From the IMG/VR virus record IMGVR_UViG_3300047499_000113, positions 124,001-188,000 of that record: 64,000 nt of DNA. The stretch is one strand, 5' to 3'. Position numbers and translations under genes: made by a program. The stretch's first letter is position 1. Every line of letters starts with the position of its first letter. The notes beneath the pieces were generated by a model. That model saw only the letters and a program-made list of their open reading frames with translations, ran no database searches and was not told the DNA's origin. Below, in pieces: positions 1 through 49,309 of the stretch.

Positions 1-3000
1 CTCCCGGAGAGCCTTGTGGTCCGATCGGACCCGTAGGTCCGGTTGCACCCGTGACCCCAGGAGAGCCTTGCGACCCGACCGGGCCGGTAGCACCTGTTGG
101 TCCTATGTCACCAGTCGGTCCTTGAGGACCCGTGGCCCCTGTGACGCCAGGTGAGCCCTGCTCACCTTGGGGTCCAGTTGGACCCGTGGCTCCAGTGACT
201 CCATCAGCACCGGTAGCCCCTTGCGGACCGGTTGCACCCGTCGGCCCGATATCGCCAGTCGGACCTTGAGGACCTGTAGCGCCAGTAACTCCAGGAGATC
301 CCTGATCGCCTTGCGGACCGGTTGCACCCGTGACGCCGGGAGAACCTTGCGGCCCGATGGGGCCTGTAGCACCGGTGACGCCAGGTGAGCCCTGCGGTCC
401 TGTGGCGCCGGTTGCTCCGTCAGCTCCCGTTGCTCCTTGCGGCCCAGTTGCCCCGGTAACACCCGGTGAGCCTTGAGGACCTGTTGCTCCTGTAACGCCA
501 TCTACTCCGGTGGCTCCTTGAGGCCCGGTAGCACCGGTTGGGCCAATTTCTCCAGTTGGACCCTGCGGCCCAGTGGCGCCAGTCACCCCCGGTGAGCCCT
601 GATCGCCTTGCGGACCTGTCGGTCCAGTGGTGCCTGTCACACCATCGGCGCCAGTGGCTCCTTGTGGTCCGGTAGCGCCCGTGACTCCAGGAGACCCTTG
701 TTCACCTTGCGGGCCGGTCGCGCCCGTAGCACCGTCCGCTCCGGTCGCTCCTCGAGGACCGGTGGCGCCAGTCACACCATCAAAGCCAGTAGCACCCTGC
801 GGACCAGTCGCTCCGGTAACTCCCGGGCTGCCCTGATCGCCTTGCGTACCAGTTGCTCCCGTGGGCCCAATGTCTCCCGTGGGCCCTTGCGGTCCAGTCG
901 CTCCTGTAACGCCCGGCGAACCCTGCGGACCGAAGTCTCCAGTCGGGCCCTGAGGCCCGGTGGCTCCAGTTACACCATCTGCACCGGTCGGGCCCTGCGG
1001 ACCTGTGGCGCCCGTGGGACCGATATCGCCAGTTGGACCTTGTGGGCCGGTGGCTCCAGTGACTCCGGGTGACCCCTGCTCCCCTTGAGGCCCTGTCGCG
1101 CCCGTGACTCCATCAGCGCCCGTAGGACCCTGAGGACCAGTTGCTCCAGTCGGTCCAACATCACCAGTAGGACCCTGGGGACCTGTCGCGCCCGTAACTC
1201 CGGGTGAACCCTGATCACCTTGTGGACCCGTAGCACCCGTGACGCCATCAACTCCGGTAGCCCCTTGAGGTCCGGTGGCGCCGGTAACTCCATCGACACC
1301 TGTCGCGCCCTGAGGGCCTGTCGCCCCGGTAACGCCCGGCGAGCCTTGGTCTCCTTGCGGGCCGGTGGCTCCAGTAACTCCTGGGCTACCTTGATCGCCC
1401 TGCGGGCCCGTGGGACCGGTCGCGCCTGTGACACCGTCATTGCCCTGTGGTCCAGTGGCGCCCGTGGGTCCGATGTCACCAGTAGGCCCTTGAGGTCCTG
1501 TCGCGCCCGTAACTCCAGGAGATCCCTGGTCTCCCTGAGGACCCGTAGCGCCGGTCGCGCCATCAGGTCCAGTTGCACCCGTAAAGCCATCGGCACCAGT
1601 CGGTCCCTGTGGGCCAGTAGCTCCGGTGACTCCATCGGCACCCGTAGCCCCTTGTGGGCCGGTGGCTCCGGTGATACCCGGCGAGCCTTGATCACCTTGA
1701 GGCCCAGTTGGACCGGTGGCACCCGTGGCTCCGTCTGGACCCGTGGCTCCTGTGACTCCTGGAGATCCTTGATCGCCCTGGGGTCCAGTCGCTCCCGTAA
1801 CTCCGGGGGAACCCTGCGGTCCAGTCGCTCCTGTGGGACCAATATCACCAGTTGGTCCTTGGGGTCCTGTGGAGCCAGTAACCCCATCAGCTCCCGTCGC
1901 ACCTTGCGGTCCAGTTGCTCCGGTGACTCCGGGTGAACCTTGATCGCCTTGCGGACCTGTCGGACCGGTTGCCCCATCAGGTCCTGTGGCTCCCGTCACT
2001 CCCGGAGATCCCTGCTCACCCTGAGGGCCGGTCGCTCCCGTGACGCCATCGTTCCCCTGTGGACCGGTCGCTCCGGTCACACCAGGAGAGCCCTGATCGC
2101 CATGAGGCCCGGTGGCGCCCGTGATGCCTGGCGAGCCTTGAGGTCCTGTAGCGCCAGTTGGCCCTATATCGCCTGTCGGGCCATGCGGTCCAGTTGCACC
2201 CGTAACCCCCGGACTACCCTGATCGCCTTGAGGCCCTGTCGGACCGGTCGCGCCTGTAACTCCATCGGGGCCAGTGGCTCCGGTTGGACCGATATCACCG
2301 GTTGGACCTTGAGGACCCGTAGCGCCGGTCACACCTGGCGAGCCCTGATCGCCCTGTGGACCCGTGGCACCGGTCACGCCGTCCGGACCGGTGGCGCCCG
2401 TGACTCCATCGGCACCCGTTGGGCCTTCAGGCCCTGTGGCGCCAGTAACGCCATCAACTCCGGTGGCGCCCGTGACTCCAGGCGATCCTTGATCACCCTG
2501 CGGCCCAGTCGCACCGGTGACTCCATCAACACCAGTTGCGCCTTGTGGGCCAGTAGCGCCGGTGGGCCCAATATCACCAGTCGGACCCTGCGGTCCAGTT
2601 GCACCCGTAACACCATCGGCACCCGTGGAGCCCTGAGGTCCTGTAGAGCCGGTGACTCCATCTGCTCCTGTCGGACCTTGGGGTCCAGTTGCACCTGTGA
2701 GCCCAGGGCTGCCTTGGTCCCCCTGCGGCCCGGTCGGTCCCGTGGCTCCAGTCGGACCGACATCACCGGTTGGTCCTTGAGGTCCGGTTGCGCCCGTGAC
2801 TCCTGGCGAACCCTGATCACCTTGTGGGCCGGTGGCTCCGGTAACACCGTCAGCTCCAGTTGCACCTTGAGGTCCGGTAGCGCCCGTGACTCCGTCAACA
2901 CCAGTCGGTCCCTGCGGACCTGTTGCACCAGTAACCCCAGGAGAGCCCTGATCACCTTGTGGGCCAGTCGGTCCAGTGGCGCCTGTGACTCCGTCCGATC

Positions 3001-5935
3001 CTGTCGGACCTTGTGGACCAGTTGCACCAGTGACACCATCATTGCCTTGAGGTCCAGTAGCGCCCGTGACGCCCGGCGATCCCTGATCTCCTTGCGGACC
3101 CGTGGGGCCGGTGGCTCCGGTAACACCGTCATTTCCTTGCGGCCCGGTGGCGCCAGTAACGCCGGGGCTGCCCTGATCTCCTTGCGGACCCGTTGCACCA
3201 GTAACCCCGGGAGAGCCCTGATCGCCTTGAGGCCCGGTGGCTCCAGTCGGACCTACGTCGCCGGTCGGTCCCTGCGGTCCGGTAGCCCCTGTGACACCGT
3301 CCGCACCAGTTACTCCTGGGGAACCTTGGTCACCTTGTGGGCCCGTTGCGCCAGTGACGCCAGGAGAACCCTGATCGCCTTGAGGCCCGGTGGCTCCAGT
3401 CGGACCTTGCGGGCCCGTAGATCCTGTGACCCCACCTTGCCCTGTGGCGCCTTGAGGTCCAGTGGCGCCTGTAACGCCAGGAGAACCCTGAGGTCCGGTC
3501 GCTCCGGTGACCCCAGGAGACCCCTGATCCCCTTGAGGCCCGGTCGGTCCGGTGGAACCTTCTGGACCAGTTGCACCAGTGACTCCGTCAGCTCCCGTAG
3601 CCCCTTGAGGTCCGGTCGCGCCGGTAGGCCCGATACCACCCGTAGGACCTTGAGGCCCGGTTGCACCTTCAGGACCAGTGGCCCCGGTGACTCCATCCGG
3701 ACCTGTGGCTCCAGTGACTCCAGGACTGCCTTGGTCGCCTTGCGGACCTGTGGAGCCGGTAACACCATCAGGACCTGTCGCTCCTGTGGCTCCGTCAGCT
3801 CCCGTGGCGCCTTGAGGACCTGTCGCTCCAGTGACCCCAGGCGATCCCAGATCACCTTGGGGGCCAGTAGGACCGGTGGCGCCCTGTGGCCCAGTGGCGC
3901 CCGTTACGCCATCCGCGCCCGTAACTCCTTGCGGTCCGGTAGCGCCGGTGACACCTGGACTTCCCTGATCTCCCTGAGGTCCGGTCGGCCCTGTAAATCC
4001 AATTTCTCCGGTTGGTCCTTGGGGACCAGTAGCTCCAGTGACACCCGGTGAGCCTTGTGGACCGGTCGTGCCAGTAACACCATCAGGACCCGTGGCGCCT
4101 TGTGGGCCCGTCGCTCCAATAGGACCGATGGCGCCCGTAGGACCCTGAGGCCCTGTCGCTCCGGTCACTCCAGGTGAACCCTGTTCGCCTTGAGGCCCAG
4201 TGGCTCCGGTCTCTCCTTGTGGACCAGTTGCACCTTGAGGCCCAGTCGGACCCGTGGCGCCAGTAACGGTTTGGCCTTGGGGTCCTGTCGCTCCGGTAAC
4301 TCCCGGCGATCCTTGCTCGCCTGCAGGACCAGTCGGGCCAGTTGCACCCGTAACACCGTCTGCGCCCGTGGCACCTTGAGGACCAGTAGGACCGGTGGCG
4401 CCCTGAGGACCGGTTGCACCGGTGACTCCCGGGGATCCCTGCGCACCGATAGGACCAGTCGGGCCAGTTTCACCCTGAGGCCCAGTCGGGCCAGTTTCAC
4501 CCTGAGGCCCAGTAGCTCCCGTGCTTCCAATCGGACCGGTCGCTCCCTGCGGACCAGTGGACCCCGTCACGCCAGGAGAGCCCTGAGGCCCAGTGGCGCC
4601 CGTGGGTCCGGTCGCACCCTGCGGACCGGTGGCTCCAGTTACTCCCGGGGATCCCTGTGGTCCGATTGCACCAGTTGGACCGGTGGACCCAGTGACTCCG
4701 GGAGAACCTTGAGGGCCAATCGGACCTGTAGGCCCGGTCTGTCCCTGAGAACCTGTGGGTCCGACAGATCCGGTGGGTCCAATGCTGCCAGTCGGACCCG
4801 TGGGGCCGGTGGCACCTTGAGGGCCAGTTTCACCTTGTGGACCCGTCGGTCCAGTGGGTCCCGTGTAACCGGGCCCAGTAGCGCCCTGCGGCCCAGTCGT
4901 CCCCTGCGGCCCAGTCGGACCCGTCGCGCCAGTAACTCCGTCCTGCCCAGTCGCGCCCTGAGGACCTGTCGCTCCTTGCGGACCGGTCTCTCCTTGCGCG
5001 CCAGTCGGTCCAGTGGGGCCAGTATAGCCAGGGCCCGTCGCGCCTTGCGGACCGGTCTCTCCTTGCGGTCCCGTGGGCCCGGTCGCGCCCGTGGTGCCGA
5101 CAGGTCCGGTCGGCCCAGTCGGTCCGATCTGACCTGTGGGACCTTGCGGTCCGGGAAGTCCAGTCGCGCCTCGAGGGCCAGGAGTGCCTTGGATGCCCTG
5201 CTGCCCCTGAGCGCCAGTCGCGCCGGCGGGACCCGTGGGTCCTGTTGCGCCTGTGACGCCGTCGATTCCCTGCGGCCCAGTCGAACCCTGCGGACCGGTA
5301 GACCCTTGGGATCCCGTGGGTCCAGCGACACCAGTTGGCCCGACCTGCCCAGTCGGACCCTGAGGACCCGTAGCGCCCTGCGGACCGGTCGCCCCTGTGA
5401 CCCCGGGCGAGCCCCGCGGCCCAGTCGAACCCGTGGGTCCTTGCGGACCAGTCGCTCCTTGCGGACCAGTTTCGCCCTGGGGACCGGTGGGCCCGACTGC
5501 TCCCGTGGGGCCGGTGGCACCTTGCGGGCCGGTCGTTCCGGTGACGCCGGCGGAGCCTTGCTCACCCGCCGGGCCAGTGGGACCAACTGCGCCCGTAGGA
5601 CCTTGCGGGCCGGTCGCTCCTTCAGGACCAGTCGCTCCCGTAGCACCTGGCTCACCAGCCGGACCAGTCGGTCCTGTCGCGCCAACGCCAGTCGGACCCG
5701 CAGGACCAGTTGCGCCCTGAGGACCGATGTCGCCTGTCGGACCAGCTTGTCCAGTAGGCCCTTGCGGACCGATTTGACCAGTGGGACCCGCGGGACCGGT
5801 CGCGCCCTGCGGACCGATAGGACCCGTCGCGCCAGTCCCTCCCTCGGGCCCAGTAGGACCCAACGGACCGGTGGCTCCCGTGGGGCCAGCCGGACCAGTC
5901 TGGAGGTGTCGGCCGCGAGGGTTCTCAATGCCCAT
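1..5935 (-). CDS. Giant collagen-like (Gly-X-Y) fibre protein, truncated by the left window edge (>1,978 aa)
   Basis: ATG at 5935 ([24 protein letters not shown]...), 4 nt after the stop of the upstream ORF. The same frame still reads GPQGSPG at positions 22-2. This frame is missing from the ORF track, consistent with no stop before the edge. Repeats include [17 protein letters not shown] and GPTGDIG. Confidence 0.93.
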
Positions 5936-5939
5936 CGGC

Positions 5940-7223
5940 CTACTCGCTTGATGCTGTGAGCGTAATCCCTATGGTCCCGGGTGCTCCCGGCACTCCACCT
6001 TCAGCCGCAACCAGCCTCACAGTCGTGGCGCCGCCTGGAACGACTGCCTCGATCATGAAGGTGATGGCCGCGCTCGAGGCAGGTATCGGTCCTTCTAGGT
6101 CCTGCAGGTACGTGTTTTGGAGTGAGAACGGCTGCTGCGGTGTGAAGTCCAGATCGATGAGCGTCGATTGAGCCTCGTCGGTCCCGTTGCCCCAGCGCAG
6201 CTGCAGCAGCGCGTAACCGCCCGGAGCGCCGTAAGAATAGGTCACATAGAAACAAATCTTCTTGATGCAGTCCGGGATGATGTATGGGGGCTGGTTGGTG
6301 AAGTTCCCGGACGGCGGCAAGCCCTGCGTCAGCAGGTGGATAGTGCGAGGCACCTCCACTTCGCAGCAGGACTTGGGCGGGCAGGGAGGCGTCGGCACAA
6401 CAGGAGGCGGAATAAATGGCGCACACGGAATCGGACTGCACCCGCCGCTGCCGCATGCTCCCGGACACGGCTCGCAGGTGGCAGCGTAGACGATCCTCGA
6501 GAAGAGTGGCCGAGTGGGCGTTGGGCAGTTCTGCAAGAACAGCGAGCTTTCGCACAGAACCGGCACGACGACCGAGTATGGAGCGCCAAGGTCCACGACG
6601 CTGAAACCAGCCCGCGCAGACTTCATCGGTGTCGATTGATCAGCCTGCCACTCCCACAAGCAGATGTAGTTGCCGCTGCAGAGCGAGACGAAGTATGGAG
6701 CGTAGTAGGCCCCCGTCGCGCTGCACATCGCCGGCGTGCGCGGATGGAGGCAGTTGCCGACAGTGTCGAGGATAGTGAAGAAAACCGCGAACGCGCTCTG
6801 CGGGAACCCGCTCTGGTTTTTCAGATAGAGCGTCAGGTCTTTCGGGCCGAGCGCTTGCCCGGACAGGAACGTGAACTGTCCTTGCGCCGGAATGTCGTTT
6901 GGTTGCAGTCGGCAGCGCTCATAGTCTGCCGGGTCAACGACGAAGATGAAATCCGTGTGGCATACGGTCGGGCCACCGAATTCCTGCATCACCTCCCAAA
7001 CGACTTTGTAGTTGCCGTTGGGGACGTTGGTGAACCAAGGAGCGTAGTAGCGACCAGTGCTTTGACGGATCGCCGGCAAACCGCGGCCAGAAACCTGCTG
7101 CCCGTCTCTTGCGTAGACGGTCCATTTGACTGAGGCGGCATCTTGAGCGTATCCGTTCGAGTTACTGAGGAATAACTGAAGATCGCCTCTCGACAGATTG
7201 CTTCGGACGAGAAAGGCCGCCAT
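5940..7223 (-). CDS. Probable virion/fibre-associated protein with two internal repeat domains and a Cys/Pro-rich linker
   Basis: 427-aa ORF. Duplicated unit DLxLxLxNxxG...TGxYYAPxF...GNYxxxWE, then linker CEPCPGACG...PPCPPKSCC. Directly upstream of the collagen gene. Confidence 0.6.
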
Positions 7224-7229
7224 TTACAC

Positions 7230-7619
7230 TCATGGTTGGGGGACGAAGGTGGCATTCAGTTCATTCGAAGCCGGCCCTGGCCTGGCCGGCGTCACATCGT
7301 AGGACAGAATGACCTCCTCCCCGAGAGTCGCCTCACGGAAGATGAGACGCCAGAAGCCAATGCGATCCGGGAAGAACCGCACAGAGTAGTAACCAGGTGA
7401 TCCGGCGATCTCGTTGAAATAGATCGTTCCCGCAGAGACGCCCGAGTCGGCAACATTGCTACCGTCCGCCAGAGGCCAGGGAATTGCTGTGTTGTCCGCG
7501 AAAACGGCGAGTCCGAGCGATGTGTAGCTCTCTCCCGTCACACGGTTGATGCTGCCATTGGGCATGTAGAGATCAATCTGATCACGGATCAGCTGACCTG
7601 CGGGCACTTGCCTGGCCAT
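7230..7619 (-). CDS. Probable structural protein (small beta-rich domain)
   Basis: 129 aa. GYYSVRFFPDRIGFWRL resembles the YYAP...GNY..W repeat of the downstream gene. Co-oriented in the fibre operon. Confidence 0.55.
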   Translation of the reverse strand: MARQVPAGQLIRDQIDLYMPNGSINRVTGESYTSLGLAVFADNTAIPWPLADGSNVADSGVSAGTIYFNEIAGSPGYYSVRFFPDRIGFWRLIFREATLGEEVILSYDVTPARPGPASNELNATFVPQP

Positions 7620-7669
7620 ACCTGGAGCAGGTATTGGAGCCCTAGAGTGCCTATGTTGTAGTCTCTGCG

Positions 7670-8059
7670 GTGGACCTCGAGAAGAAACTCGAAGCCCTAC
7701 GCTCTCAGTTGGCCCAGGCCGCGCAGGCTGTCGTTGACGAGTGGGAGCAGGACGAAGAGGGCATGGACGAAGAACTTGGAGGCGGTGGCGTTTGCGACCG
7801 TGTGTCCGAGGCCATGCAAGGAGTGGTGGCCGACCAGCTCGAGGGAGTGGAATTCACCGAGGGCGGCCAACCCGGCGACGACCACGCATACTTCATCGTG
7901 TACGACGAGGACGAAGCATTCGCTGTCGACATCCCGCCAAGCGTCTACGAGACTGGCGGAGGCTACAGCTGGAAGAAGCGGCAGGACGCGCAGATCGAAC
8001 CGTCAGACGTCGTCTTCTCCGAGGTCGAGCGAGATTTGGTCGCTGACTGGGAAGACTAG
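7670..8059 (+). CDS. Hypothetical acidic protein
   Basis: 129-aa ORF filling the gap. TAGTCT -10-like box 5 nt before the GTG. Confidence 0.7.
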   Translation: MDLEKKLEALRSQLAQAAQAVVDEWEQDEEGMDEELGGGGVCDRVSEAMQGVVADQLEGVEFTEGGQPGDDHAYFIVYDEDEAFAVDIPPSVYETGGGYSWKKRQDAQIEPSDVVFSEVERDLVADWED

Positions 8060-8298
8060 GGATCGAAGCAGAGCTGCTTCATGTCCATGACGTTCTTCGC
8101 GTATTCACTGGCTTTCACCAAAGCCTTGCCCGAGTAGTAGTCTTCCCTCAACTGTTTGAGGGAACCGCCCGGGTTGGTGAACACGAAGAAAACGCGAGCC
8201 CCCTGCTTGCGCCTATTCTGCATGTGGCATCCAGCCAGCTTCAGATACGCGGCCAAGTAGATGTCGTGGGTCTCAAACTTCTCTTCAAGTTCCGGCAT
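8056..8298 (-). CDS. DUF5659-like small phage protein
   Basis: N-terminal FETHDIYLAAYLKLAG and RVFFVF match the TxDxYLAAYL pattern recalled for DUF5659. Confidence 0.65.
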   Translation of the reverse strand: MPELEEKFETHDIYLAAYLKLAGCHMQNRRKQGARVFFVFTNPGGSLKQLREDYYSGKALVKASEYAKNVMDMKQLCFDP

Positions 8299-8363
8299 TT
8301 GGGTCTCAGTATGCGTCTGCGTTTCCGCACACTCTACTGAGTGAAGGGTCCCAAATGCACAGA

Positions 8364-8392
8364 CGCCCTCGCTGGAGGAGACAGCGAGGGCG
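8364..8392 (-). terminator. Stem-loop downstream of the 8404-9672 gene (putative terminator)
   Basis: 11-bp perfect inverted repeat cgccctcgctg/cagcgagggcg just after the stop. Only a weak U-tract on the minus strand. Confidence 0.5.
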
Positions 8393-8403
8393 CCGGATGC
8401 CGC

Positions 8404-9672
8404 TTACAGCGTGTAAGCGGTGTGCCCGTCGTCTTCGGTGATGAAGACCGCCGGACCTGCAGCGTAACCGAGGCGAGCCGTCGCGCCCTCGTTCGCGCCG
8501 AAGGGCGACTGGTACGGGGTTTGGGCCGGGTAACCGGGCTGGAAGTAGGACGCCGAGAGCAGCGAGAGCTTGCCCTTGGCGAACGACAGGAGCACCGGAC
8601 CCGTCTCGATGAGCTGCGGCGCGATGGCGTTCTGGATGGCCGTCGCGAGCGCGAGGAACGCACCGCTCGGCGTCGAGGCCGAGTAGCCCGTCATGTTCGC
8701 GAAGGTCGACAGGGCGCCGATCTGCGAATACGAGATGTTGAAGGACAGCGTCTCCTCGGTCCAGCCGAGCGCCGTATCCACCAGCGCCGCCGGGTTGTAG
8801 ATGACAACCGACGTTGGCGAGATGTACTGGACGATCTGCCACGTGCCGTCGTTGGAGGCGTGAGTGCCGCCCGTCAGCACCAGGTAGTGCAGCGTCGAGT
8901 TGGCCGTCATGCCCGTGAGGCCCGTGATGACCGCGGTGCCGTTGGTGCCGACCGAAGCCACGGCTGCAGCGGCGCCAGTTTGGCCCGCGATGGCCGTGAA
9001 CTGGTAGACGCCGGCGTTGGCCGAGGTGCCGATGAGCGACGAGGTGCCCGCCGCACCATTCGCCACGGGCAGACCGGACAGAGCCGACGTCGAAACGCCG
9101 AGAGCTGTCGCGAGCGTGCCGCCGAGGTGCATGTACGCGGTCGGACCCGAGTTGAGCGCGCTGACGAAGGGCGCCGGAGGCTGCGGCGACACACCCAGCG
9201 GCGGCTGAGGAACGCCGGCGTACGTCGAGGAGAACGACGCCGTCACGCTGGCGCCTGGCGCCACCGTGTTGATGCCGATCTGGCCCGAGTGCGGATCCGT
9301 GGAACCCTGCACGATCGCCGTCAGCGACTGCGCGAGCCCGTTGGCCGCGAACGCCGCGTTGAGGGCCACGGCCAGCTGCGCCGCCGTGTACGTCCCCGTC
9401 GCGATCGTCATGGTGATCGTGGGACCGCCAGACTGCACGATGGCCGTCAGGGTGTTGTTGGCACCCGTGAGCGTCAGCGGAAACGTGGCGCTGTTGCCCG
9501 GGTTGCTCAGGAACGCGTACTGATTCAGTACGCTGGTGAGCGTGGTGTTCGAGGGGAACTCGAAGTACCGGCTCTGTCCCGGCGGTTGCGAGGAGAAGTT
9601 CCTCTGCGAGGTATTCTCCACGTCGTCGAGGTAGATCCTCGAGAGGTCTTGGCGGATGAGTCCAACGCGCAT
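8404..9672 (-). CDS. Probable virion structural protein (Ala/Thr/Gly-rich, beta-rich)
   Basis: 422 aa, strong GC3 codon bias, GAGGAG RBS, composition typical of tail/fibre proteins. Confidence 0.6.
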   Translation of the reverse strand: MRVGLIRQDLSRIYLDDVENTSQRNFSSQPPGQSRYFEFPSNTTLTSVLNQYAFLSNPGNSATFPLTLTGANNTLTAIVQSGGPTITMTIATGTYTAAQLAVALNAAFAANGLAQSLTAIVQGSTDPHSGQIGINTVAPGASVTASFSSTYAGVPQPPLGVSPQPPAPFVSALNSGPTAYMHLGGTLATALGVSTSALSGLPVANGAAGTSSLIGTSANAGVYQFTAIAGQTGAAAAVASVGTNGTAVITGLTGMTANSTLHYLVLTGGTHASNDGTWQIVQYISPTSVVIYNPAALVDTALGWTEETLSFNISYSQIGALSTFANMTGYSASTPSGAFLALATAIQNAIAPQLIETGPVLLSFAKGKLSLLSASYFQPGYPAQTPYQSPFGANEGATARLGYAAGPAVFITEDDGHTAYTL

Positions 9673-9716
9673 TGTCTTCTCCTCAAACTCCTGTGCTCAT
9701 CAAAGCGTGAAGATGC

Positions 9717-10316
9717 TCAGGTCACCGTGAACACGTTGCTGAGCTTCGAATTGCTCTGGACCTGAACCATCCAGCCCGCCACGACTGGCCCACCCGTCAC
9801 CAGTGTGTTCGGCAGGACGATCGATGCGGCTGCGATGGTGCCGCCGCCTCCAGTGATGGCGGTGTCCTTGATCGTCTGCTTGGCACCGCTGAGGTTCGTC
9901 AGGATGACGTAGGTGTGGTCCGGCGTGAGCGACAGGAACGTCGCACCCGAGGCAGGACCCGAAATCGTGGTGTCGCCCACCGGCGTGTTGTGCACAGCGC
10001 CCGTGATCGAAGGACCGGCCGAAAGTCCGCCAGCGTGGGTGAAGAAGCTGACGTAGCCTTTCGCGGCGAGCTTGGTGATCACTCCGTGCGGAAGCTGCGA
10101 CTGGAGCCTGACCTCGTCCGATGGAACGAGGTCGAGATAGCCCGGCACAGTCGGATCGATGGGGTTGACGTACGGGACATAGACCGCCTGCTTCGGCGTC
10201 TGCGCGTACGTGAGATCGGTCTCGAACTGGCCCGAGGTCCGGTCGATCTTGTCGAGCAGGATGTCTCGCGGCAGCACCTGCGAGTTGATGACCCTGACGT
10301 ATGCCGGCGTTTGCAT
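9717..10316 (-). CDS. Probable virion structural protein
   Basis: 199 aa, AGGAG RBS, Thr/Gly/Val-rich C-terminal half, putative late motif upstream. Confidence 0.6.
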   Translation of the reverse strand: MQTPAYVRVINSQVLPRDILLDKIDRTSGQFETDLTYAQTPKQAVYVPYVNPIDPTVPGYLDLVPSDEVRLQSQLPHGVITKLAAKGYVSFFTHAGGLSAGPSITGAVHNTPVGDTTISGPASGATFLSLTPDHTYVILTNLSGAKQTIKDTAITGGGGTIAAASIVLPNTLVTGGPVVAGWMVQVQSNSKLSNVFTVT

Positions 10317-10354
10317 GCCTGTCTCCTACTTGACTGAAGTCGATAAAAGCTGCA

Positions 10355-11098
10355 TCAGTGCATCGGGTCGTTTCGCTGGGAGCCGATGAAGTTGAAGGGA
10401 ACCGAGGCGCCATTGCCACGAACGAAGAGTTGCGACACAGCCGGGTAAGTCGTCACCAGGTTCACGAAATCGCTCGAAAGTGTGGGGACTTGGAACTCCG
10501 GGCCCGTAGGCTCGAATGCCACGTACAGGATCGCACCGCCGTTGTTCTGGATCTGGACGTTGTTGACCTGGCAAGGCAGCTGGATCTCGAGTGAGCCGGA
10601 AAGAGCCCCCGCGTTCGGAGCACTTCCGCTGAGAAGGATCGGTCGATTGGGTGCAATTGGATACGGCAAGATAAGCATCCCGGACTCGGCCGTATTGGTC
10701 GTGCCGTCCAGATTGACCTGCTGAACGCGAAGCCAGAACGGCGTGGAGTCGCTCACACCCACGGTCGAGAAAACCGTGTTGACTTTGCCGCCTGTCATAT
10801 AGTCGGTCGGAGCGAACCTGAATCGCGTCAGATACGGCTGTCGACTCTGACTGAACTGCTCAGAGTCGCCCATGATGTTCTGCATGCCCTGCACGCTCGG
10901 CGAGGCATAGCCACCAGACACGGGCATGTTCTGGAACGTCGTGTATGCCCCATCGAAATTGGCAGCAACCTGAAAGTTGTACGAGGCCGCGTTCGCACGC
11001 GACTCCGGACTGGTCGGGGTCGTGGCATTCGGGCCCGACGTCAAGTTGATGTCGACCAGATTCGGGCGACGCCTATAGAGCGACAGATACCGTGCCAT
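10355..11098 (-). CDS. Probable virion structural protein
   Basis: 247 aa, co-oriented in the structural cluster, putative late motif upstream. Confidence 0.55.
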   Translation of the reverse strand: MARYLSLYRRRPNLVDINLTSGPNATTPTSPESRANAASYNFQVAANFDGAYTTFQNMPVSGGYASPSVQGMQNIMGDSEQFSQSRQPYLTRFRFAPTDYMTGGKVNTVFSTVGVSDSTPFWLRVQQVNLDGTTNTAESGMLILPYPIAPNRPILLSGSAPNAGALSGSLEIQLPCQVNNVQIQNNGGAILYVAFEPTGPEFQVPTLSSDFVNLVTTYPAVSQLFVRGNGASVPFNFIGSQRNDPMH

Positions 11099-11123
11099 CG
11101 CTCGGATGAGCGATAAAAAGCCG

Positions 11124-12176
11124 CTATGGAAGGTCGTACACGGTCATCACGATATATTCGTACGGATTGCTGCCAGAGTTGATGCTCACGGTAGCTGGGG
11201 TGACCGTCGTCTGCTGCCACTGGAGCTGGATCGTATGGGAGGTTCCAGGCGTGTTGGCGATCACTTGGGCCCCGCTCAAGCTCTGCGATACACCAGCGTA
11301 ATCGGTCGTGCCAGTCGCGAGGATCTTCGTCTGCGTGGCCCCGTCGAGCGAGAATCCCACCGTTGCACCGTTCTGCACGGCGTCGGAATCGTACGAATAA
11401 TCGACTTGCACCAAAATACGGGTCCCGTTGAAAGTCTGAGTCGTCGTCATCCCGCCCAGGTCCGCCAGGGGTGCATGGGACGCGAGTTGGTAGTCGAACC
11501 CGGTCGCGACCGTGTAAACGGCAAGTACCCCGCCACCATTCGTACCTGCGGGACCAGTCGGACCTTGCGGACCAGTCGGACCTTGCGGCCCACCAGAAGG
11601 ACCAGTCGGACCTTGCGGCCCTACCGGTCCTGTAGCTCCTTGAGGTCCTGTAGCTCCATTTATGCCCGCAGGACCCGTTGCGCCTTGGGGTCCAGTCAAG
11701 CCATCGACGCCAGCCGGTCCAGTCGAACCCTGGGGGCCGGTAGTGCCATCAGCACCAGTCGGTCCCTGAGGGCCTGTTGCACTAGGACCGGTTGCTCCCG
11801 CAGGACCCACAGGACCTTGGGGGCCGATGGGACCCTGAGGACCGAAACCAGGAGGTCCCTGAGGACCGGGCGGGCCTATAGGACCAATGGGTCCAGGCGG
11901 GCCCGGAACGAACTGCACAGGCGCGGCCGAGCCCTGGGCCACCAGCTGAGCGGTGAAGGAATAGGTGAATTGTCCCGGGCTCTGATTGGCACCCGTCAGA
12001 ACGATGTTTGTGATGAACGTATTCGGCGCGTTGAGCTGCGAGTAGACTGCAGCCGCATTCCCAAACACGAAACCCATCGGATCGGGCAGCGCCTGATCCG
12101 ACACCACAATGATGCCGGCCGATATGACGGCCGGATTCGAACTAGGAGTCCGATTGGCGCTGATCGTGGTGCTCAC
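11124..12176 (-). CDS. Collagen-like protein (N-domain, ~100-aa Gly-X-Y segment, beta-rich C-domain)
   Basis: [16 protein letters not shown]...[10 protein letters not shown] between non-repetitive domains. Confidence 0.85.
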
Positions 12177-12206
12177 ATCAGCACGCCGCCATAAACAGCT
12201 TGCCGC

Positions 12207-12641
12207 CTAGACGATGAGCTTGTCTTTCTTCGTCTCGGCGATCTTGGCGTCGAAGGTCGGAGCAGCCTCAAGGCCCCTGTCCTTGATGGCCTGAGACTTG
12301 GCTTCTTCCCAGGTGCCGGTCTCCTCGCCCTTGTAGTTGGGGAGTGCCTTCTTCGGCGGCCCGTACCTGTCGAGCTGGCGCTTTCCGGCGGCCTCGGCTG
12401 CCTTTTGGCGATACTGCTTGAATCTGTTGCCCTTGGACGGCCAGGAACCCGTGGGACCATCCTTCAGGACGATGTGCGGAGCGTACGGAACCCACTTGTA
12501 GTTGCAGGGGTCTCCGCACTGCACGCACGGAGGGTGCACGGCCCGCATGTCGTCCTTGATGGAGACCTCGACCTCGAAGACGGTTCGGTTTCCATCCGGG
12601 CCAAGGCACCCATCGTTGGTGCACTCGTACGTGTAGATCAT
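12207..12641 (-). CDS. FmdB-like zinc-ribbon protein
   Basis: MIYTYECTNDGC...FEV...PPCVQCG matches the Y-x-Y-x-C...C-x-x-C-G pattern of the FmdB (CxxC_CxxC_SSSS) family. Confidence 0.7.
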   Translation of the reverse strand: MIYTYECTNDGCLGPDGNRTVFEVEVSIKDDMRAVHPPCVQCGDPCNYKWVPYAPHIVLKDGPTGSWPSKGNRFKQYRQKAAEAAGKRQLDRYGPPKKALPNYKGEETGTWEEAKSQAIKDRGLEAAPTFDAKIAETKKDKLIV

Positions 12642-12649
12642 GGGCTACT

Positions 12650-32190: not shown

Positions 32191-33081
32191 TCAGCGCGCG
32201 ACGATCAGGCGCACCAGGCCGCGGGGGTTGTACGCCCCGATGCCAAGGTTCTCGAACATTGAGAAACCTATTGTCCGCTCCTCGGGGTTGTCGGCCGAGA
32301 GAACCGTCAGCTCCGTGCGGACCGGGATGCGACCGAAGTGCTCCGGCTCACACGTGATGTAGACGACGCCGGCGGCGACGAGGCGGCTGACGATGAACTG
32401 GGCGTTCCAGCCCGTCGCCATCATGCCCGTCTTCCACAGCGTGGCCTGGCTCTCGATGTCGAGCACGTCGCGCCCGAACTTGCGGATGTCCGCGTAGTCG
32501 GTCGCGTTCATGTAGACGCGAGCGACGCGGAGGTCCTGCCGCTCGATCTCGGCGAACGCGTCCGCGAGAACGGCCGGAGAGATCGGAGCGATGACGGGGA
32601 CGTCGGGGTTGGTCTGCCCCGGCAGCTCGTCGAAGCCGTTGACGGCGAGCGCGTCCATGATGGAGAAGACGCGGTCGTCTTCTGCCGCCTGGACCTGCGC
32701 CTTGCCGAGGTCCTGCATACGCTTGAGGAGGTCGTACCGACGCTCCTTGATCTGCGTGAGCGGGGCCTTGGGCAGGGCGGCGATCTCGAAGAGCGGGAAG
32801 ATCACGCGCCGCGGCTTCATGACCGCGGTGATGCTCTCGCCCTCCTCACCGATGACGTACGCGGTGACATCCGGATCCTTGTCGTAGATCGGGAGAGCAC
32901 CGTCGGGCAGCTGCTCGACCAGGAAGGTCTTGCGACCCACGGACGAGTAGTCGCGCCGCTCGCGGAGCGGCTGGATCATGGACGCCGCGAGGCGCTTGCG
33001 ACCAGCCGAAGAGCCGATGAACTTGTCGACGACCTGCTCCTTGATCGTGTTGTCGACAACCTGAACGCCGAAGGGATTCAT
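32191..33081 (-). CDS. Major capsid protein (short HK97-fold type)
   Basis: 296 aa, extreme GC3 bias, terminator downstream, last in the protease-scaffold-decoration order. GRKRLAASMIQPLR...DY...GRK.FLVEQLPDGA.P.YD resembles, from memory, capsids of Bxz1/Myrna-like large myoviruses. Confidence 0.85.
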   Translation of the reverse strand: MNPFGVQVVDNTIKEQVVDKFIGSSAGRKRLAASMIQPLRERRDYSSVGRKTFLVEQLPDGALPIYDKDPDVTAYVIGEEGESITAVMKPRRVIFPLFEIAALPKAPLTQIKERRYDLLKRMQDLGKAQVQAAEDDRVFSIMDALAVNGFDELPGQTNPDVPVIAPISPAVLADAFAEIERQDLRVARVYMNATDYADIRKFGRDVLDIESQATLWKTGMMATGWNAQFIVSRLVAAGVVYITCEPEHFGRIPVRTELTVLSADNPEERTIGFSMFENLGIGAYNPRGLVRLIVAR

Positions 33082-46757: not shown

Positions 46758-48707
46758 TCAGCGGGGTCTTGTCCGTGGGACACGTCGCATGGACGCTCCG
46801 CCTCCGTGCATGCGGTCCCGCATCCGGTGATAGTGATGATACCCGTACGTCGGCACCCGTGACGAAGGCGCCGGGGCGAGGATCGTTCCGGCCGTCAGGA
46901 GGGACGGGTTGTCCTTGACATACTCGTTGGCAAGTGCGACCGAACGGACGAGGGCGTCCGACTGGTCGTCGTGCTTGCCCGCGATCTTTGGCGCCTCGAC
47001 GATGATGATGTTCTTTCCACCCGACGTCGACTGCAGCTCAAGCAGCTCGGAGATGAGCGGGGAATGCTTGCTGCCGTCCCACAGTTTGGTCTCGTCAGCC
47101 TGAGGAATCGGGTAGTCGTACAAGGCGAGCTGTTTGTAGTACATGCTCATCTTGAACCCGTGATACATCTGCGACGAGTCCATAGTCGAGAAGTTGCGCT
47201 GCTCGAATTGGATGAGATGGCGCTTGTGCAGCACTTGTTCGAAGATGGGGCCCGCCCACTGGTCGAACACTCCCTTGATGATGTAGAACCTTCTCGAGAG
47301 TGCGAAGAACCAATCAGCAATGGCTTCGATGTCGAGCCTCGCCTGATCCTGGAGAGTCATGGCGTACGGCACCATCGGCGACGGCAAGTGAGGATTGCAC
47401 TCCGCCCATTTCTTCTTCGGATACCACACCTCGTGGTAAGCCAGCTCTATCCTGCCCGAGTTGACACGAGTCAGAGCGATGGCGGTGCCGTCGCCCGAGA
47501 GACCGAAGTCGACGCCCGCCCAGTGGGGCTCGCGCGGAATGCCAACTTGCTTGGGCCGCAGGTCGGGAACGATGCAAGCCTGAAGGTCCCGGGCGTCCTC
47601 GATGAAACCGCGGACGCGGTCCGAGAACTGAGCGCCGTGCTCCGTCATGAAGCCAGCGGGATCCTTGGCGTACTCCTCCTCGTAGTAGCTCTTGGGAAGG
47701 TCCGGGCGGATTTCCCACGTCGGCGCCTGGATCATGAGCATGTTGCGCGACTCGGGTCCGCCCGTCAGGCTCATCTCGTACTGCTTGTAGAAGAAACCCT
47801 CTCGCGCGTCGGGCGACGAGATGAGAATCATGCGGCCTTCGGTATCACCGACCGCCTTGCGGGTCTTCTTGTCCTTCTTGGCGAACTGCGCGATGGAGGG
47901 CTTGATGGCCTTGTACACGCGTTCGGCCGAGCTTTTGCCGTTGTCGACGAAGAATGCGATCTCGTCGAGAATTGCGCAAATGATACCACGACCGCGGAGA
48001 CCCTTGGCGATGGATGATTTGAACGTCGCCGTAATGGTGCCCTTGCCCTCAGGGCCGAACTTCTTGCGGTCATTTTCCGTTCGGAAGCGCAAGAACGTTT
48101 GCGTGTCGTGCGCCACTGACGACTTGAAGTAGTCGATGGCCTGGATGTGGCCCTGGATGTCGTTGTAGACGATCGACGCCTGCTCTTTGTCGTTCGCGAT
48201 GTCGAGGATACGAATTTCGGAGCCCGGCGGCATGCCGTAGTAAGCCTGCGGGTGCCCGCGCTTGAGGAGCTTGTACAGCTCGTACGCCGCGAAGACGGCC
48301 GAGAGCGCGCTCTTACCAGAACGGCGGCCGAGGATGAGGACCAGCTCGCGGCGCTCTCTCCCGTCCTGCTCGCGGATGTTGCATCGCTTGTTGTCGAACA
48401 GGTACTGAAGGTATTCCTTCTCGGTCAGTTCGAGCTTGATCGCGTCGCCGTACCTGTCGGTGATCTTGATGCACTTCTCGGTGTCGTCGAGCGGGATGTT
48501 GTAGTACAGCTTGATGATGAAGCGCTGCGCGGGGAAAAGCCCGTCCGGGAAGAGCTTGAACCGGTCGATGAATTCGAGAATATTGAGGAACTCAACATCG
48601 CCTTCAGTGTCCGACTTCTGCTGACTGCCTTGCTTCCGCTTCCTGGCGATGAAGCCAGACACCTCTGCAGTCAGCTCGCTCTTGAATACAGGCTCGCGCG
48701 TCGGCAT
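46758..48707 (-). CDS. terL: Terminase large subunit
   Basis: Walker A LGRRSGKS, Walker B ILDEIAFF, motif III ISSP, RNase H-like GVDFG...HDDQSDA. Confidence 0.93.
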   Translation of the reverse strand: MPTREPVFKSELTAEVSGFIARKRKQGSQQKSDTEGDVEFLNILEFIDRFKLFPDGLFPAQRFIIKLYYNIPLDDTEKCIKITDRYGDAIKLELTEKEYLQYLFDNKRCNIREQDGRERRELVLILGRRSGKSALSAVFAAYELYKLLKRGHPQAYYGMPPGSEIRILDIANDKEQASIVYNDIQGHIQAIDYFKSSVAHDTQTFLRFRTENDRKKFGPEGKGTITATFKSSIAKGLRGRGIICAILDEIAFFVDNGKSSAERVYKAIKPSIAQFAKKDKKTRKAVGDTEGRMILISSPDAREGFFYKQYEMSLTGGPESRNMLMIQAPTWEIRPDLPKSYYEEEYAKDPAGFMTEHGAQFSDRVRGFIEDARDLQACIVPDLRPKQVGIPREPHWAGVDFGLSGDGTAIALTRVNSGRIELAYHEVWYPKKKWAECNPHLPSPMVPYAMTLQDQARLDIEAIADWFFALSRRFYIIKGVFDQWAGPIFEQVLHKRHLIQFEQRNFSTMDSSQMYHGFKMSMYYKQLALYDYPIPQADETKLWDGSKHSPLISELLELQSTSGGKNIIIVEAPKIAGKHDDQSDALVRSVALANEYVKDNPSLLTAGTILAPAPSSRVPTYGYHHYHRMRDRMHGGGASMRRVPRTRPR

Positions 48708-48709
48708 GA

Positions 48710-49309
48710 TTACACCGCTTCCGAAATGCGCTTCTCCCACTCGGCCATGTCAGCCTCTATCTGTCGAAAGACCAGGTCGATGTCGTTGTCGGCAACGCCG
48801 GCTTTCTGCATGGCCTCGTGAATGAACTCGAGCCATTGGTGGATGACCTTCTTGAACTCCGGGCTCCTGAAGTCCATCCGCTCTTGGCGGTTGTTCTCCT
48901 GGCGCTTGAGAAGCACATCGGCCAGGTTCCGGAGCATGGAGATGCGGGCGATAGTGTGCTGGACGGTGGGCTTGCCCTCCTTGGTAGCCTTGCGACGTTC
49001 GAATTTGAGGTGGGCGAGTTCTTCAGTGATCTCCTGGATGGCCAGTTCGATCATCTCGCCAGTGGCGCCACGGCGCGTAGCCGCTTGCACCAGTTCCTGG
49101 CGCCTGACGTAGTCCTCGCGCTCCCGAAGCTCCTGCTCGGCTGCTTTCGGGTCGATGACTTCCGGGGTCGGAACGTTCCCGCTCGGGCCGACGATGACCC
49201 CGCTCATGCCGATTTCGCCGGTGTTGATCTTCTTCCCACCGGGGAGGACGAGAAGTTTGCCTTTAGGCTCGTCCTTCTTGTCTTTGTCCTTGTCCTCGGT
49301 GTCGTCCAT
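48710..49309 (-). CDS. Probable terminase small subunit
   Basis: 199-aa helical protein abutting TerL; assigned by position only. Confidence 0.5.
   Translation of the reverse strand: MDDTEDKDKDKKDEPKGKLLVLPGGKKINTGEIGMSGVIVGPSGNVPTPEVIDPKAAEQELREREDYVRRQELVQAATRRGATGEMIELAIQEITEELAHLKFERRKATKEGKPTVQHTIARISMLRNLADVLLKRQENNRQERMDFRSPEFKKVIHQWLEFIHEAMQKAGVADNDIDLVFRQIEADMAEWEKRISEAV

What the first reader, a model, noticed from the sequence alone, without database searches (positions are those of the whole stretch)
1..5935. Enormous collagen-like ORF (>1,978 aa, missed by the ORF track)
Seen: after a 13-residue leader the frame is essentially continuous Gly-X-Y to the window edge, with rare G-X-G breaks. 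It is built from cassettes ([25 protein letters not shown], GATGxDGVT) and is rich in Thr/Gln at Y. Established: triple helices rise ~0.29 nm per residue, vertebrate fibrillar collagen domains are ~1,000 residues, and Thr-rich bacterial collagens such as BclA are glycosylated. Inference: a filament of more than ~550 nm, probably a head or tail whisker for adsorption or matrix attachment, possibly glycosylated.
Basis: partly seen in the sequence, partly recalled or inferred. Interest (0 to 1): 0.75.

Follow-up and report, generated by a model that had tools for sequence, protein, structure and literature searches.

The report
Giant collagen fibre of a huge phage
A very large bacterial virus from a moss metagenome carries an intact 2,295-residue gene that is almost entirely collagen-like, ends in a small trimer-forming knob, and sits beside a second giant collagen gene and a cluster of sugar-adding enzymes; it most likely makes a sugar-coated thread about 0.6 micrometres long on the virus particle.

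Summary
On the minus strand an ATG at window 5935 opens a stop-free frame that leaves the window. In the 240-kb contig the ORF is 2,295 aa: a 13-aa leader, 2,155 aa of Gly-X-Y (716 triplets, 4 breaks, the last 537 triplets unbroken) and a 127-aa C-terminal domain.

It is not an assembly artefact. The longest exact repeat is 53 bp. Contigs from two further samples tile it without mismatch at flank depth. An independent IMG/VR contig is identical over 20.4 kb.

The C-terminal domain has no Pfam family. It folds at pLDDT 97.9 as a TNF/C1q/BclA-type jelly roll and is predicted to trimerise.

The host genome is a contractile-tailed huge phage with terminase, portal, capsid, sheath and baseplate genes. 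CheckV rates it 56% complete.

A second collagen gene of 1,567 aa overlaps the stop codon (TAATG). Three glycosyltransferases and sugar-modifying enzymes follow downstream. Fibre 1, fibre 2 and the large transferase keep this order on two other contigs; a third keeps collagen gene and transferase.

Thr fills 53% of Y positions. There are no Lys-Asp/Glu clamps, and no prolyl hydroxylase was found.

Best reading: a glycosylated accessory virion fibre with a distal adhesive knob. The attachment site, head/neck or tail, is unresolved. This is a new variant of a known kind.

The parts
1..5935 (-). Window part (residues 1-1978) of collagen fibre gene 1. The full ORF is genome 123048-129935 (L001:11048-17935, minus strand), 2,295 aa, and continues 953 nt beyond the window's left edge.
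   Evidence: Stop-free translation. Pfam Collagen 911.5 bits. Identical in an independent IMG/VR contig.
5897..5935 (-). 13-residue non-collagen leader. It is the first start codon after an upstream stop, and only 11 open codons lie upstream of it.
   Evidence: The open frame is 2,306 codons against an ORF of 2,295.
4264..5896 (-). N-terminal quarter of the collagen domain. It is more varied in sequence and carries all four Gly-X-Y breaks (near residues 86, 304, 357 and 557).
1..4261 (-). Start of the unbroken run of 537 triplets (residues 559-2169), built from 15- to 45-residue cassettes. The motif GSPG[VIL]TG occurs 52 times in the protein.
5940..7223 (-). Upstream 427-aa gene that ends 4 nt before the collagen ATG. 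It has no family match. Its two ends are conserved in a 295-aa protein of the related contig L026.
11124..12176 (-). Separate small collagen-like gene (350 aa, 117 aa of Gly-X-Y) with PHROG 'tail fiber' profile hits. The 362-aa ORF on the opposite strand is its shadow.
32191..33081 (-). Major head protein (context). It shows that the record is a tailed phage of the phage-G-like huge-phage lineage.
   Evidence: phrog_2522, E 2.7e-46. 74.6% identical to LR745208.1 (485 kb), 45.7% to Tunturi_5 and 35.7% to Bacillus phage G.
44178..45971 (-). Portal protein (context).
   Evidence: phrog_16240, E 2e-26.
46758..48740 (-). Terminase large subunit (context).
   Evidence: phrog_2, E 3.3e-26. 44% identical to LR745208.1.

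Best explanation
The ORF is an intact structural gene of a huge contractile-tailed phage.

Assembly (inferred by analogy with C1q, collagen X and BclA). Three chains are brought into register by the 127-residue C-terminal jelly-roll domain, which forms a TNF/C1q/BclA-type trimer. The Gly-X-Y region then zips from the C- to the N-terminus into one triple helix about 0.6 micrometres long, acidic (pI about 4) and almost free of lysine.

Stabilisation (inferred). The chain has no hydroxyproline system that I could find and no Lys-Asp/Glu clamps. Its stability most likely comes from Pro at X (38%) and from O-glycosylation of the Thr that fills 53% of Y positions. The glycosyltransferase and sugar-modification island just downstream would supply this.

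Function (inferred). The product is an accessory fibre on the virion. The short leader and the break-rich first quarter would sit at the particle, and the knob would be the distal binding module. This widens the capture radius of a large, slowly diffusing particle, or lets it reach through host slime.

The attachment site is most likely the head or neck rather than the baseplate. The overlapping downstream 1,567-aa collagen gene is a partner fibre of the same module.
For: Shown:
- Intact 2,295-aa ORF and Pfam Collagen at 911.5 bits.
- Purifying selection with scrambled synonymous sites.
- Sound assembly. The longest exact repeat is 53 bp. Logan contigs of X1 and X3 tile window 1-6000 with 0 mismatches at depths of 18.6 and 10.4 against 17.8 and 10.6 in the flank, and the X5 pieces also show 0 mismatches. 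An independent IMG/VR contig is identical over 20,381 bp.
- Knob: 2,546 homologues. The AlphaFold model has pLDDT 97.9. Foldseek and VIA matches include 4-1BBL (Z 9.2), the phage 7-7-1 tail fibre (Z 8.5), a chain of the cyanophage Pam1 capsid entry (Z 8.1), and F-BclA, BxpB, BclA and C1q-like domains (Z 7.3-7.8).
- Closest viral folds are the C-termini of collagen-repeat proteins of giant viruses and uncultured tailed phages, TM 0.77-0.86.
- Predicted homotrimer: score 0.97, best of 3 controls 0.00. In calibration the mark was reached by 20 of 30 proteins solved as pairs of one chain and 1 of 23 solved as single chains. These counts hold only roughly, because my own alignment and three copies were used. 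The N-termini lie in the interface.
- Phage identity: terminase, portal and capsid, sheath and baseplate wedge.
- Glycosylation island: GT2+GT4/GT1 828 aa, GT1 792 aa, GT1 377 aa, FkbM methyltransferase, B12-radical-SAM enzyme and UDP-Glc/GDP-Man dehydrogenase.
- Conserved order. Knob fibre, then a second fibre with a conserved N-terminal domain, then the large GT: shown by sequence on L024 and L026. The P0152 contig has a collagen gene (different C-terminus) followed by an 829-aa GT of like Pfam architecture; no second fibre or sequence comparison there.
- On two of these contigs the fibre gene lies 3-6 kb after the capsid gene.
- In this phage the baseplate wedge gene lies about 77 kb away and has its own 541-aa collagen-like fibre gene beside it.

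From the literature: Thr-containing triplets are over-represented in bacterial and viral collagens, and (Gly-Pro-Thr)10 folds only when galactosylated (PMC11923368).
Against: - There are no proteomic, EM or transcript data. The one RNA run laid on the gene gave nothing.
- A 13-residue leader is a very small anchor, and no anchoring partner was identified.
- The upstream 427-aa protein and the other neighbours have no recognisable family.
- In a small phage fragment (L019) a stand-alone copy of the knob domain lies right after the baseplate genes. That favours a tail role for the family.
- The transferases could instead act on host polysaccharide or on another virion protein.
- Only 56% of the genome is held, so a hydroxylase or an anchor protein could lie in the missing part.
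- The closest GenBank relative by capsid (74.6%) has no collagen gene at all, so the fibre is dispensable for that body plan.
Confidence: 0.55

Rival explanations
1. It is a true long tail fibre. It would be anchored at the baseplate or tail tip, perhaps through an adaptor, with the knob as the receptor-binding tip.
For: - Collagen-like phage proteins are mostly filed as tail fibres in PHROGs.
- Knob-like folds occur at the ends of tail fibres: Agrobacterium phage 7-7-1 (Z 8.5) and the cyanophage A-1(L) short tail fibre (Z 8.0).
- In L019 a stand-alone homologue of the knob lies directly after the baseplate hub and wedge genes.
Against: - The gene lies between the capsid gene and the sheath gene, about 77 kb from the baseplate wedge gene. 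That wedge gene has its own collagen-like fibre gene next to it.
- On two related huge contigs the homologous fibre gene is 3-6 kb after the capsid gene.
- No baseplate-attachment domain is present; there is only a 13-residue leader.
Confidence: 0.25
2. It is not part of the virion. The phage would make it in the infected cell, together with the sugar enzymes, to remodel the host surface or build an extracellular matrix.
For: - The collagen genes are adjacent to a glycan-synthesis island of a kind often classed as auxiliary metabolic genes (PMC11924767 lists such transferases in related phages).
- There is no recognisable virion-attachment domain.
- The module is absent from the closest GenBank relative.
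Against: - The N-terminus does not look like a secretion signal. This is my reading of the 13 residues, not a formal prediction.
- The gene sits inside the structural region, on the same strand as the capsid and sheath genes.
- The closest folds of the knob are virion or spore-surface fibre tips.
Confidence: 0.1
3. It is an assembly artefact or a decayed repeat tract with no protein product.
For: The region is repetitive and was assembled from short reads. De Bruijn contigs break at three points inside the gene. The exact protein sequence is not in the 15-billion-protein collection.
Against: - There are no stops in 2,295 codons.
- The longest exact repeat, 53 bp, is shorter than a read.
- Depth equals that of the flank, and there are zero mismatches in three samples.
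- An independent contig is identical over 20.4 kb.
- Identical peptides are encoded by fully diverged synonymous codons.
Confidence: 0.02

Closest known systems
BclA / F-BclA collagen-like filaments of Bacillus spores (exosporium nap, F-ENA tip fibrillum)
   Same: - Short N-terminal anchoring peptide, then a Thr-rich Gly-X-Y stalk, then a C-terminal TNF/C1q-like jelly-roll trimer (fold matches 9h38, 3twi and 3tyj, Z 7.3-7.8).
- Glycosylation genes lie next to the structural gene. For bclA this rests on my own knowledge.
- The anchor proteins ExsFA/BxpB share the same fold.
   Different: - No detectable sequence relation, and no hit to any Pfam family, BclA or C1q families included.
- The stalk is many times longer (2,155 residues).
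- It is encoded by a phage, not a spore former.
- The BclA N-terminal attachment motif was not recognised in the 13-residue leader.
Collagen-repeat proteins of giant viruses (Klosneuvirus, Edafosvirus, Solumvirus) and of uncultured tailed phages
   Same: These give the best structural matches to the knob (TM 0.77-0.86, 20-34% identity). They share the collagen stalk plus C-terminal knob architecture.
   Different: The proteins matched there are 244-1,392 residues long, and their function is likewise untested. Here the host is a bacteriophage, and the gene has a tandem partner and a conserved transferase island.
SPP1 gp12, a collagen-like trimer that binds capsid hexamers; phi29 head fibres; T4 fibritin whiskers
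   Same: These are accessory, dispensable fibres on the head or neck of tailed phages. gp12 uses a collagen-like motif (cited in PMC11923368; the rest is my own knowledge).
   Different: gp12 is a very short protein, whereas this one has 2,295 residues. No sequence or fold comparison with these proteins was made here.
Prophage collagen-like tail-fibre proteins of E. coli O157:H7 (EPclA and relatives)
   Same: They are phage-encoded collagen-like trimers with a C-terminal trimerising or fibre domain (PMC3368898).
   Different: Those are short. According to PMC11923368 they are stabilised by Pro at X and by about 22% charged residues, and are not Thr-rich. This protein has 1 Lys and no KGD or KGE.
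Riftia cuticle collagen (glycosylated Thr at Y)
   Same: Thr, rather than hydroxyproline, dominates the Y position. Glycosylation of that Thr is the stabilising principle (Mann 1996 and the Gly-Pro-Thr peptide work, as cited in PMC11923368).
   Different: It is an animal extracellular collagen with no knob of this kind. Glycosylation here is only inferred from gene context.

Membership tests
Collagen triple-helix repeat proteins (Pfam PF01391) | Gly at every third residue over long runs, and a match to the family profile above its cut-off | tested here: met
   716 triplets with 4 breaks and a longest run of 1,611 residues. PF01391 scores 911.5 bits against a cut-off of 27.2.
Collagen triple-helix repeat proteins (Pfam PF01391) | The chains actually form a trimeric, right-handed triple helix | not testable with these tools
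   This needs CD and thermal melt, collagenase or trypsin resistance, or EM of the protein.
TNF / C1q / BclA-C jelly-roll trimer superfamily | Compact jelly-roll beta-sandwich fold of about 120-150 residues | tested here: met
   The model has pLDDT 97.9. Foldseek gives probability 1.00 to 4-1BBL, ExsFA, F-BclA, C1q-like proteins and cerebellin. VIA Z scores are 7.3-9.2. AFDB clusters named BclA C-terminal, BclB, TNF and C1q also match. Z values of 7-9 are only moderately above background for beta-sandwiches.
TNF / C1q / BclA-C jelly-roll trimer superfamily | Homotrimer about a three-fold axis, with the N-termini together | tested here: met
   This is a prediction only. Score 0.97, best of 3 controls 0.00; in calibration the mark was reached by 20 of 30 proteins solved as pairs of one chain and 1 of 23 solved as single chains, counts that hold only roughly here. 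Residues 1-7 lie in the interface.
TNF / C1q / BclA-C jelly-roll trimer superfamily | Sequence membership in a curated family (Pfam C1q, TNF, BclA C-terminal) | tested here: not met
   None of the 61 aligned members matches these families at E <= 0.01. The PDB profile search gave only YomS at E 0.022. So it has the same fold class, but it is an undescribed sequence family with 2,546 representatives.
Phage tail fibre | Encoded in or next to the baseplate/tail-tip module, with an N-terminal baseplate-attachment domain | tested here: not met
   The gene lies between the capsid and sheath genes, about 77 kb from the baseplate wedge gene. Its N-terminus is 13 residues. PHROG 'tail fiber' hits of sister genes rest mostly on the collagen repeats.
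Phage head or neck accessory fibre (SPP1 gp12, phi29 gp8.5, T4 Wac type) | Physically bound to the capsid or neck and dispensable for infectivity | not testable with these tools
   Only gene position supports it. The gene is 3-6 kb after the capsid gene on two related contigs, and the closest GenBank relative has no collagen gene.
Glycosylated Thr-type collagens (BclA, Riftia cuticle) | Thr dominant at Y, with dedicated glycosyltransferases | tested here: met
   Thr fills 381 of 716 Y positions. Three transferase genes and sugar-modifying genes lie directly downstream, and the large transferase is syntenic on related contigs.
Glycosylated Thr-type collagens (BclA, Riftia cuticle) | Glycans actually attached to the collagen Thr | not testable with these tools
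   This needs mass spectrometry or glycan staining of the protein.
Hydroxyproline-type (animal or Mimivirus-like) collagen | A prolyl or lysyl hydroxylase is present, and Pro is frequent at Y | tested here: not met
   There is no PF13640 match in the 240 kb held. Pro fills only 55 of 716 Y positions. Caveat: the record is 56% complete.

The most novel reading that the evidence does not exclude
The two overlapping collagen genes would build one composite thread. The trimeric knob of the 2,295-aa fibre would dock onto the conserved N-terminal domain of the 1,567-aa fibre, giving an appendage of about 1 micrometre, several times the size of the particle.

Both stalks are Lys-free and hydroxyproline-free. 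They would fold only because phage-encoded enzymes glycosylate a repeated sequon (GSPG[VIL]TG, seen only in this group of contigs). That would be a virus-encoded collagen-stabilising system distinct from both the hydroxyproline code and the salt-bridge code.
Probability: 0.12. Interest if true: 0.8.

Novelty: new variant of a known kind. Interest (0 to 1): 0.55.

Why it matters
Collagen-like fibres with a C1q/BclA-type knob are known in spores, giant viruses and phages. This one pushes the design to an extreme.

- It has 2,148 residues in Gly-X-Y runs and 1,611 without a break. Among the 120 best-scoring large collagen proteins in a 5.8-billion-protein collection, the maxima are 1,515 residues in total (fish type VII collagen) and 1,179 unbroken. 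That is a sample, not a census. PMC11923368 mentions prokaryotic chains of up to about 2,000 triplets.
- It lacks both known stabilising devices, hydroxyproline and Lys-Asp/Glu clamps.
- It sits next to a conserved glycosylation island.

It is therefore a clean natural test case for Thr-glycosylation-driven collagen folding, and a candidate source of very long, hydroxylase-independent recombinant collagen. For phage biology, it suggests that some huge soil and peat phages carry micrometre-scale accessory fibres that metagenomic annotation currently misses or splits.

Tried and rejected
- Megablast of window 6000-16000 against GenBank phages gave no match.
- tblastn of the knob and of the fibre-2 N-terminal domain against 50,697 phage records gave no match.
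- Pfam and PHROG scans of the immediate neighbours (427, 129, 422 and 247 aa) and of the knob gave nothing.
- The word-based search for giant proteins (1,262-4,016 aa) with this knob found none.
- The search for related loci with the alignment failed because no column block was conserved enough. The single-sequence scan then found two loci.
- The single-sequence AlphaFold model was poor (pLDDT 54) and was replaced by the alignment-based model.
- The termini of fibre 2 gave no PDB sequence match. The Atlas gave only a weak RHS-repeat lead at 0.83.
- The Atlas search of the 427-aa neighbour was uninformative.
- No tRNA genes were found in the loci scanned: the window plus genome 1-120000 and 188001-240015, so about 4 kb (120001-124000) was not scanned.
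- No sigma-70-like promoter, and no terminator excess over shuffles, lies around the two genes.
- Read-through or fusion with the upstream gene was rejected. The frames differ and a TAG stop lies 4 nt before the ATG.
- The many 'joints' are cross-matches between repeat cassettes of one contig, not rearrangements. The same contigs lie colinear with zero mismatches.
- The exact protein sequences are not in the 15-billion-protein collection.

Full report
**Observation.** The minus strand of window 1-5935 carries an ATG at 5935, followed by 1,978 codons without a stop up to the window edge. The ORF list omitted it only because it runs off the source. The long plus-strand ORFs it lists there (1940-4051, 4190-5959) are antisense shadows of a GGN-periodic frame.

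The window is bases 124001-188000 of a single 240,015-bp contig. In that contig the ORF spans 123048-129935 and encodes 2,295 aa.

**Anatomy.**
- A 13-residue leader comes first.
- Then come 2,155 residues of Gly-X-Y, that is 716 triplets.
- Four breaks occur near residues 86, 304, 357 and 557. Three are G1G type and one is G4G type.
- Residues 559-2169 form one unbroken run of 537 triplets.
- A 127-residue non-collagen C-terminus ends the protein.
- Pro fills 38% of X positions. At Y, Thr fills 53% and Gln 23%.
- There are 110 acidic against 11 basic residues, giving a pI of about 4.
- The protein has one Lys and no KGD or KGE triplet.
- Pfam Collagen scores 911.5 bits.
- At about 0.286 nm per residue the helix would be about 0.61 micrometres long.

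**Is it real?**
- Tandem Repeats Finder sees only 65-80% identical DNA units. The longest exact repeat across both collagen genes is 53 bp, so ordinary reads bridge every repeat.
- Thirty-five copies of the peptide [13 protein letters not shown] are encoded by 35 different DNA strings. Third-position identity is 0.30, about what unconstrained four-fold sites give. This is strong evidence for a translated frame under purifying selection. It also means the DNA offers little substrate for slippage.
- Public runs from a moss metagenome hold the sequence.
- Logan contigs of two samples tile window 1-6000 with zero mismatches, at depths of 18.6 and 10.4 against 17.8 and 10.6 in the unique flank. A third, thin sample gives eight listed pieces, all mismatch-free.
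- A different IMG/VR record of 111 kb is identical over 20,381 bp, including the whole gene.
Long reads would still be the formal proof.

**What genome is this?** It is an IMG/VR virus record, linear, and CheckV rates it 56% complete. It encodes these hallmark proteins:
- terminase large subunit, portal, and a capsid-protease-like protein;
- a major head protein that is 74.6% identical to the 485-kb uncultured phage LR745208.1, 45.7% to the acidobacterial jumbo phage Tunturi_5, and 35.7% to Bacillus phage G;
- a 1,939-aa protein with a tail-sheath domain, and a baseplate wedge protein.

It is therefore a contractile-tailed huge phage, probably well over 240 kb. No tRNA genes were found in the window or in the nine loci scanned; about 4 kb of the contig (120001-124000) was not scanned.

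**The C-terminal domain.**
- A full HMMER scan of 1.84 billion representatives finds 2,546 homologues, yet no Pfam family matches.
- Homologues occur in two forms. Some are single copies at the end of proteins of 150-1,660 aa. Others are three tandem copies in proteins of about 400 aa.
- With a 61-sequence alignment, AlphaFold gives a model with pLDDT 97.9.
- Foldseek and VIA-align place it in the TNF/C1q jelly-roll class. Matches include 4-1BB ligand (Z 9.2), the Agrobacterium phage 7-7-1 tail fibre (Z 8.5), a chain of the cyanophage Pam1 capsid entry (Z 8.1), the F-BclA tip domain, BxpB/ExsFA, BclA and C1q-like proteins (Z 7.3-7.8). AFDB clusters named BclA or BclB C-terminal, TNF and C1q also match.
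- The closest viral models are the C-termini of collagen-repeat proteins of Klosneuvirus and other giant viruses and of uncultured tailed phages (TM 0.77-0.86).
- Three copies are predicted to form a trimer. The score is 0.97 and the best of 3 controls is 0.00. In calibration the mark was reached by 20 of 30 proteins solved as pairs of one chain and 1 of 23 solved as single chains. These counts hold only roughly here, because my own alignment and three copies were used.
- The N-terminal residues lie in the interface, which is where a triple helix would emerge.
- The architecture therefore matches C1q and BclA: a C-terminal trimerising knob that can nucleate and register the helix.

**Surroundings.**
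- The stop codon overlaps the start of a second collagen gene (TAATG). That gene encodes 1,567 aa: an N-terminal domain of about 105 aa, one unbroken run of 454 triplets, and a C-terminal domain of about 100 aa with YD-like hairpin repeats.
- Downstream, all on that strand except the methyltransferase (plus strand), come an endonuclease VII gene and four unknown genes.
- Then follows a sugar island: a GT2 + GT4/GT1 protein of 828 aa, GT1 proteins of 792 and 377 aa, an FkbM methyltransferase, a B12-binding radical-SAM enzyme, and a UDP-glucose/GDP-mannose dehydrogenase.
- No 2OG-Fe(II) prolyl-hydroxylase domain was found.

**Comparative context.**
- On L024, a 453-kb contig, a 1,166-aa protein has the same knob (50% identity) and the same collagen cassettes. 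It is followed by an overlapping 1,293-aa protein whose first 124 residues match fibre 2 at 53%. An 879-aa transferase, 45-50% identical to the 828-aa one, follows.
- The 99.7-kb contig L026 has the same order, but with a 595-aa knob protein that has almost no collagen. It also shares the five genes upstream of our fibre.
- A 472-kb JGI contig has a 2,349-aa collagen protein with a different C-terminus, followed by an 829-aa GT2+GT4 protein.
- On the 453-kb and 472-kb contigs the fibre gene lies 3-6 kb after the capsid gene.
- The motif GSPG[VIL]TG occurs 52 and 37 times in the two fibres here, and 25-36 times in five related metagenomic proteins (P0151, P0152, P0176, P0008, P0243). In 118 of 125 collagen-rich proteins examined it occurs 0-4 times, not at all in 106. 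It is absent from this phage's own 541-aa baseplate-side collagen fibre.
- LR745208.1, the nearest GenBank relative, has no collagen gene at all. The module is therefore accessory and variable in stalk length: 595, 1,166 and 2,295 aa.

**How unusual is the size?**
- Among the 120 best-scoring proteins of 1,262-4,016 aa in a 5.8-billion-protein collection, the largest total in Gly-X-Y runs is 1,515 residues (fish type VII collagen). The longest unbroken run is 1,179 residues.
- This protein has 2,148 and 1,611. That is a sample, not a census.
- PMC11923368 states that prokaryotic collagen-like chains reach about 2,000 triplets. I therefore claim only that it is extreme for a virus-encoded, almost purely collagenous protein.

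**Mechanism.**
- Shown: the ORF, its composition, the knob fold class, the gene context and the synteny.
- Predicted by model: trimerisation of the knob.
- Inferred: folding from C- to N-terminus nucleated by the knob; O-glycosylation of Thr, and perhaps Ser, by the neighbouring enzymes as the stabiliser.
- The glycosylation inference rests on three points. The chain has neither hydroxyproline machinery nor the Lys-Asp/Glu clamps that PMC11923368 finds dominant in viral collagens. The same paper recalls that (Gly-Pro-Thr)10 folds only when galactosylated. The transferase travels with the fibre genes.
- Also inferred: the fibre is virion-bound, with the knob distal and the break-rich first quarter acting as a hinge region near the particle.
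- Attachment at the head or neck is favoured by gene position, between capsid and sheath and about 77 kb from the baseplate, which has its own fibre. A stand-alone knob gene after the baseplate genes of L019, together with knob-like tail-fibre tips in the PDB, keeps a tail role alive.

**Verdict.** This is a real and striking gene. It is a new variant of the known 'collagen stalk plus C1q/BclA-type knob' fibre, embedded in a conserved fibre-pair-plus-glycosyltransferase module of huge phages. Virion location and function remain inference.

Noticed in passing
outside the window: genome 118345-123048 (L001:6345-11048, minus strand): A second giant collagen gene of 1,567 aa. It has one unbroken run of 454 triplets, and its start overlaps the stop of the first gene (TAATG). 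Its N-terminal domain of about 110 aa is conserved in the gene that follows the knob fibre on two other contigs (L024, L026).
   Followed up: partly
outside the window: genome 103142-114395 (L007:3142-14395): A glycan island: a GT2+GT4/GT1 protein of 828 aa, GT1 proteins of 792 and 377 aa, an FkbM methyltransferase, a B12-radical-SAM enzyme and a UDP-Glc/GDP-Man dehydrogenase. The 828-aa enzyme is 40-50% identical to, and syntenic with, transferases next to fibre genes on L024 and L026.
   Followed up: partly
window 35526-38330 (-): A 934-aa protein with weak head-maturation-protease and phrog_2774 hits carries LAGLIDADG homing-endonuclease, Hint and intein-splicing domains. This looks like an intein inserted in a head-module gene.
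   Followed up: no
window 11106-12194 (both strands): A 350-aa collagen-like gene on the minus strand (PHROG tail-fibre profiles, E 3.8e-42) is mirrored by a longer 362-aa ORF on the plus strand. A length- or GC3-based gene caller picks the wrong strand here, and also over the giant collagen genes.
   Followed up: partly
proteins P0007, P0012 and many others: Hundreds of proteins of about 400 aa consist of three tandem copies of the knob domain. They may be single-chain pseudo-trimers of a TNF-like fold. One has a weak Pfam hit to the cyanophage Pam3 baseplate plug gp18.
   Followed up: no
window 1-5935 and L001:6345-11048: The motif GSPG[VIL]TG occurs 52 and 37 times here and 25-36 times in five related metagenomic proteins. 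It occurs 0-4 times in the other 118 of 125 collagen-rich proteins checked. It is a candidate glycosylation sequon or a lineage signature.
   Followed up: partly
window 1-5935: Synonymous sites of repeated cassettes are fully scrambled: 35 identical peptides are encoded by 35 different DNA strings, with third-position identity 0.30. The cause could be great age under purifying selection or selection against recombinogenic repeats.
   Followed up: partly
outside the window: genome 86830-92649: The tail-sheath domain occupies only the last 345 or so residues of a 1,939-aa protein. Several other orphan proteins of 1,100-2,080 aa lie in the tail region (genome 8-70 kb).
   Followed up: no
window 4500-9000: Two metatranscriptome runs (X10, X11) hold about 8% of the sampled words of this stretch, but X10 laid nothing on window 1-6000. 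Any RNA or carried-over DNA signal therefore lies in 6000-9000, not in the collagen gene.
   Followed up: no
LR745208.1 (W01), whole 485-kb record: The closest GenBank relative (capsid 74.6%, terminase 44%) has no PF01391 match at all. It also has no homologue of the fibre or transferase module in the 48 kb next to its capsid gene.
   Followed up: yes
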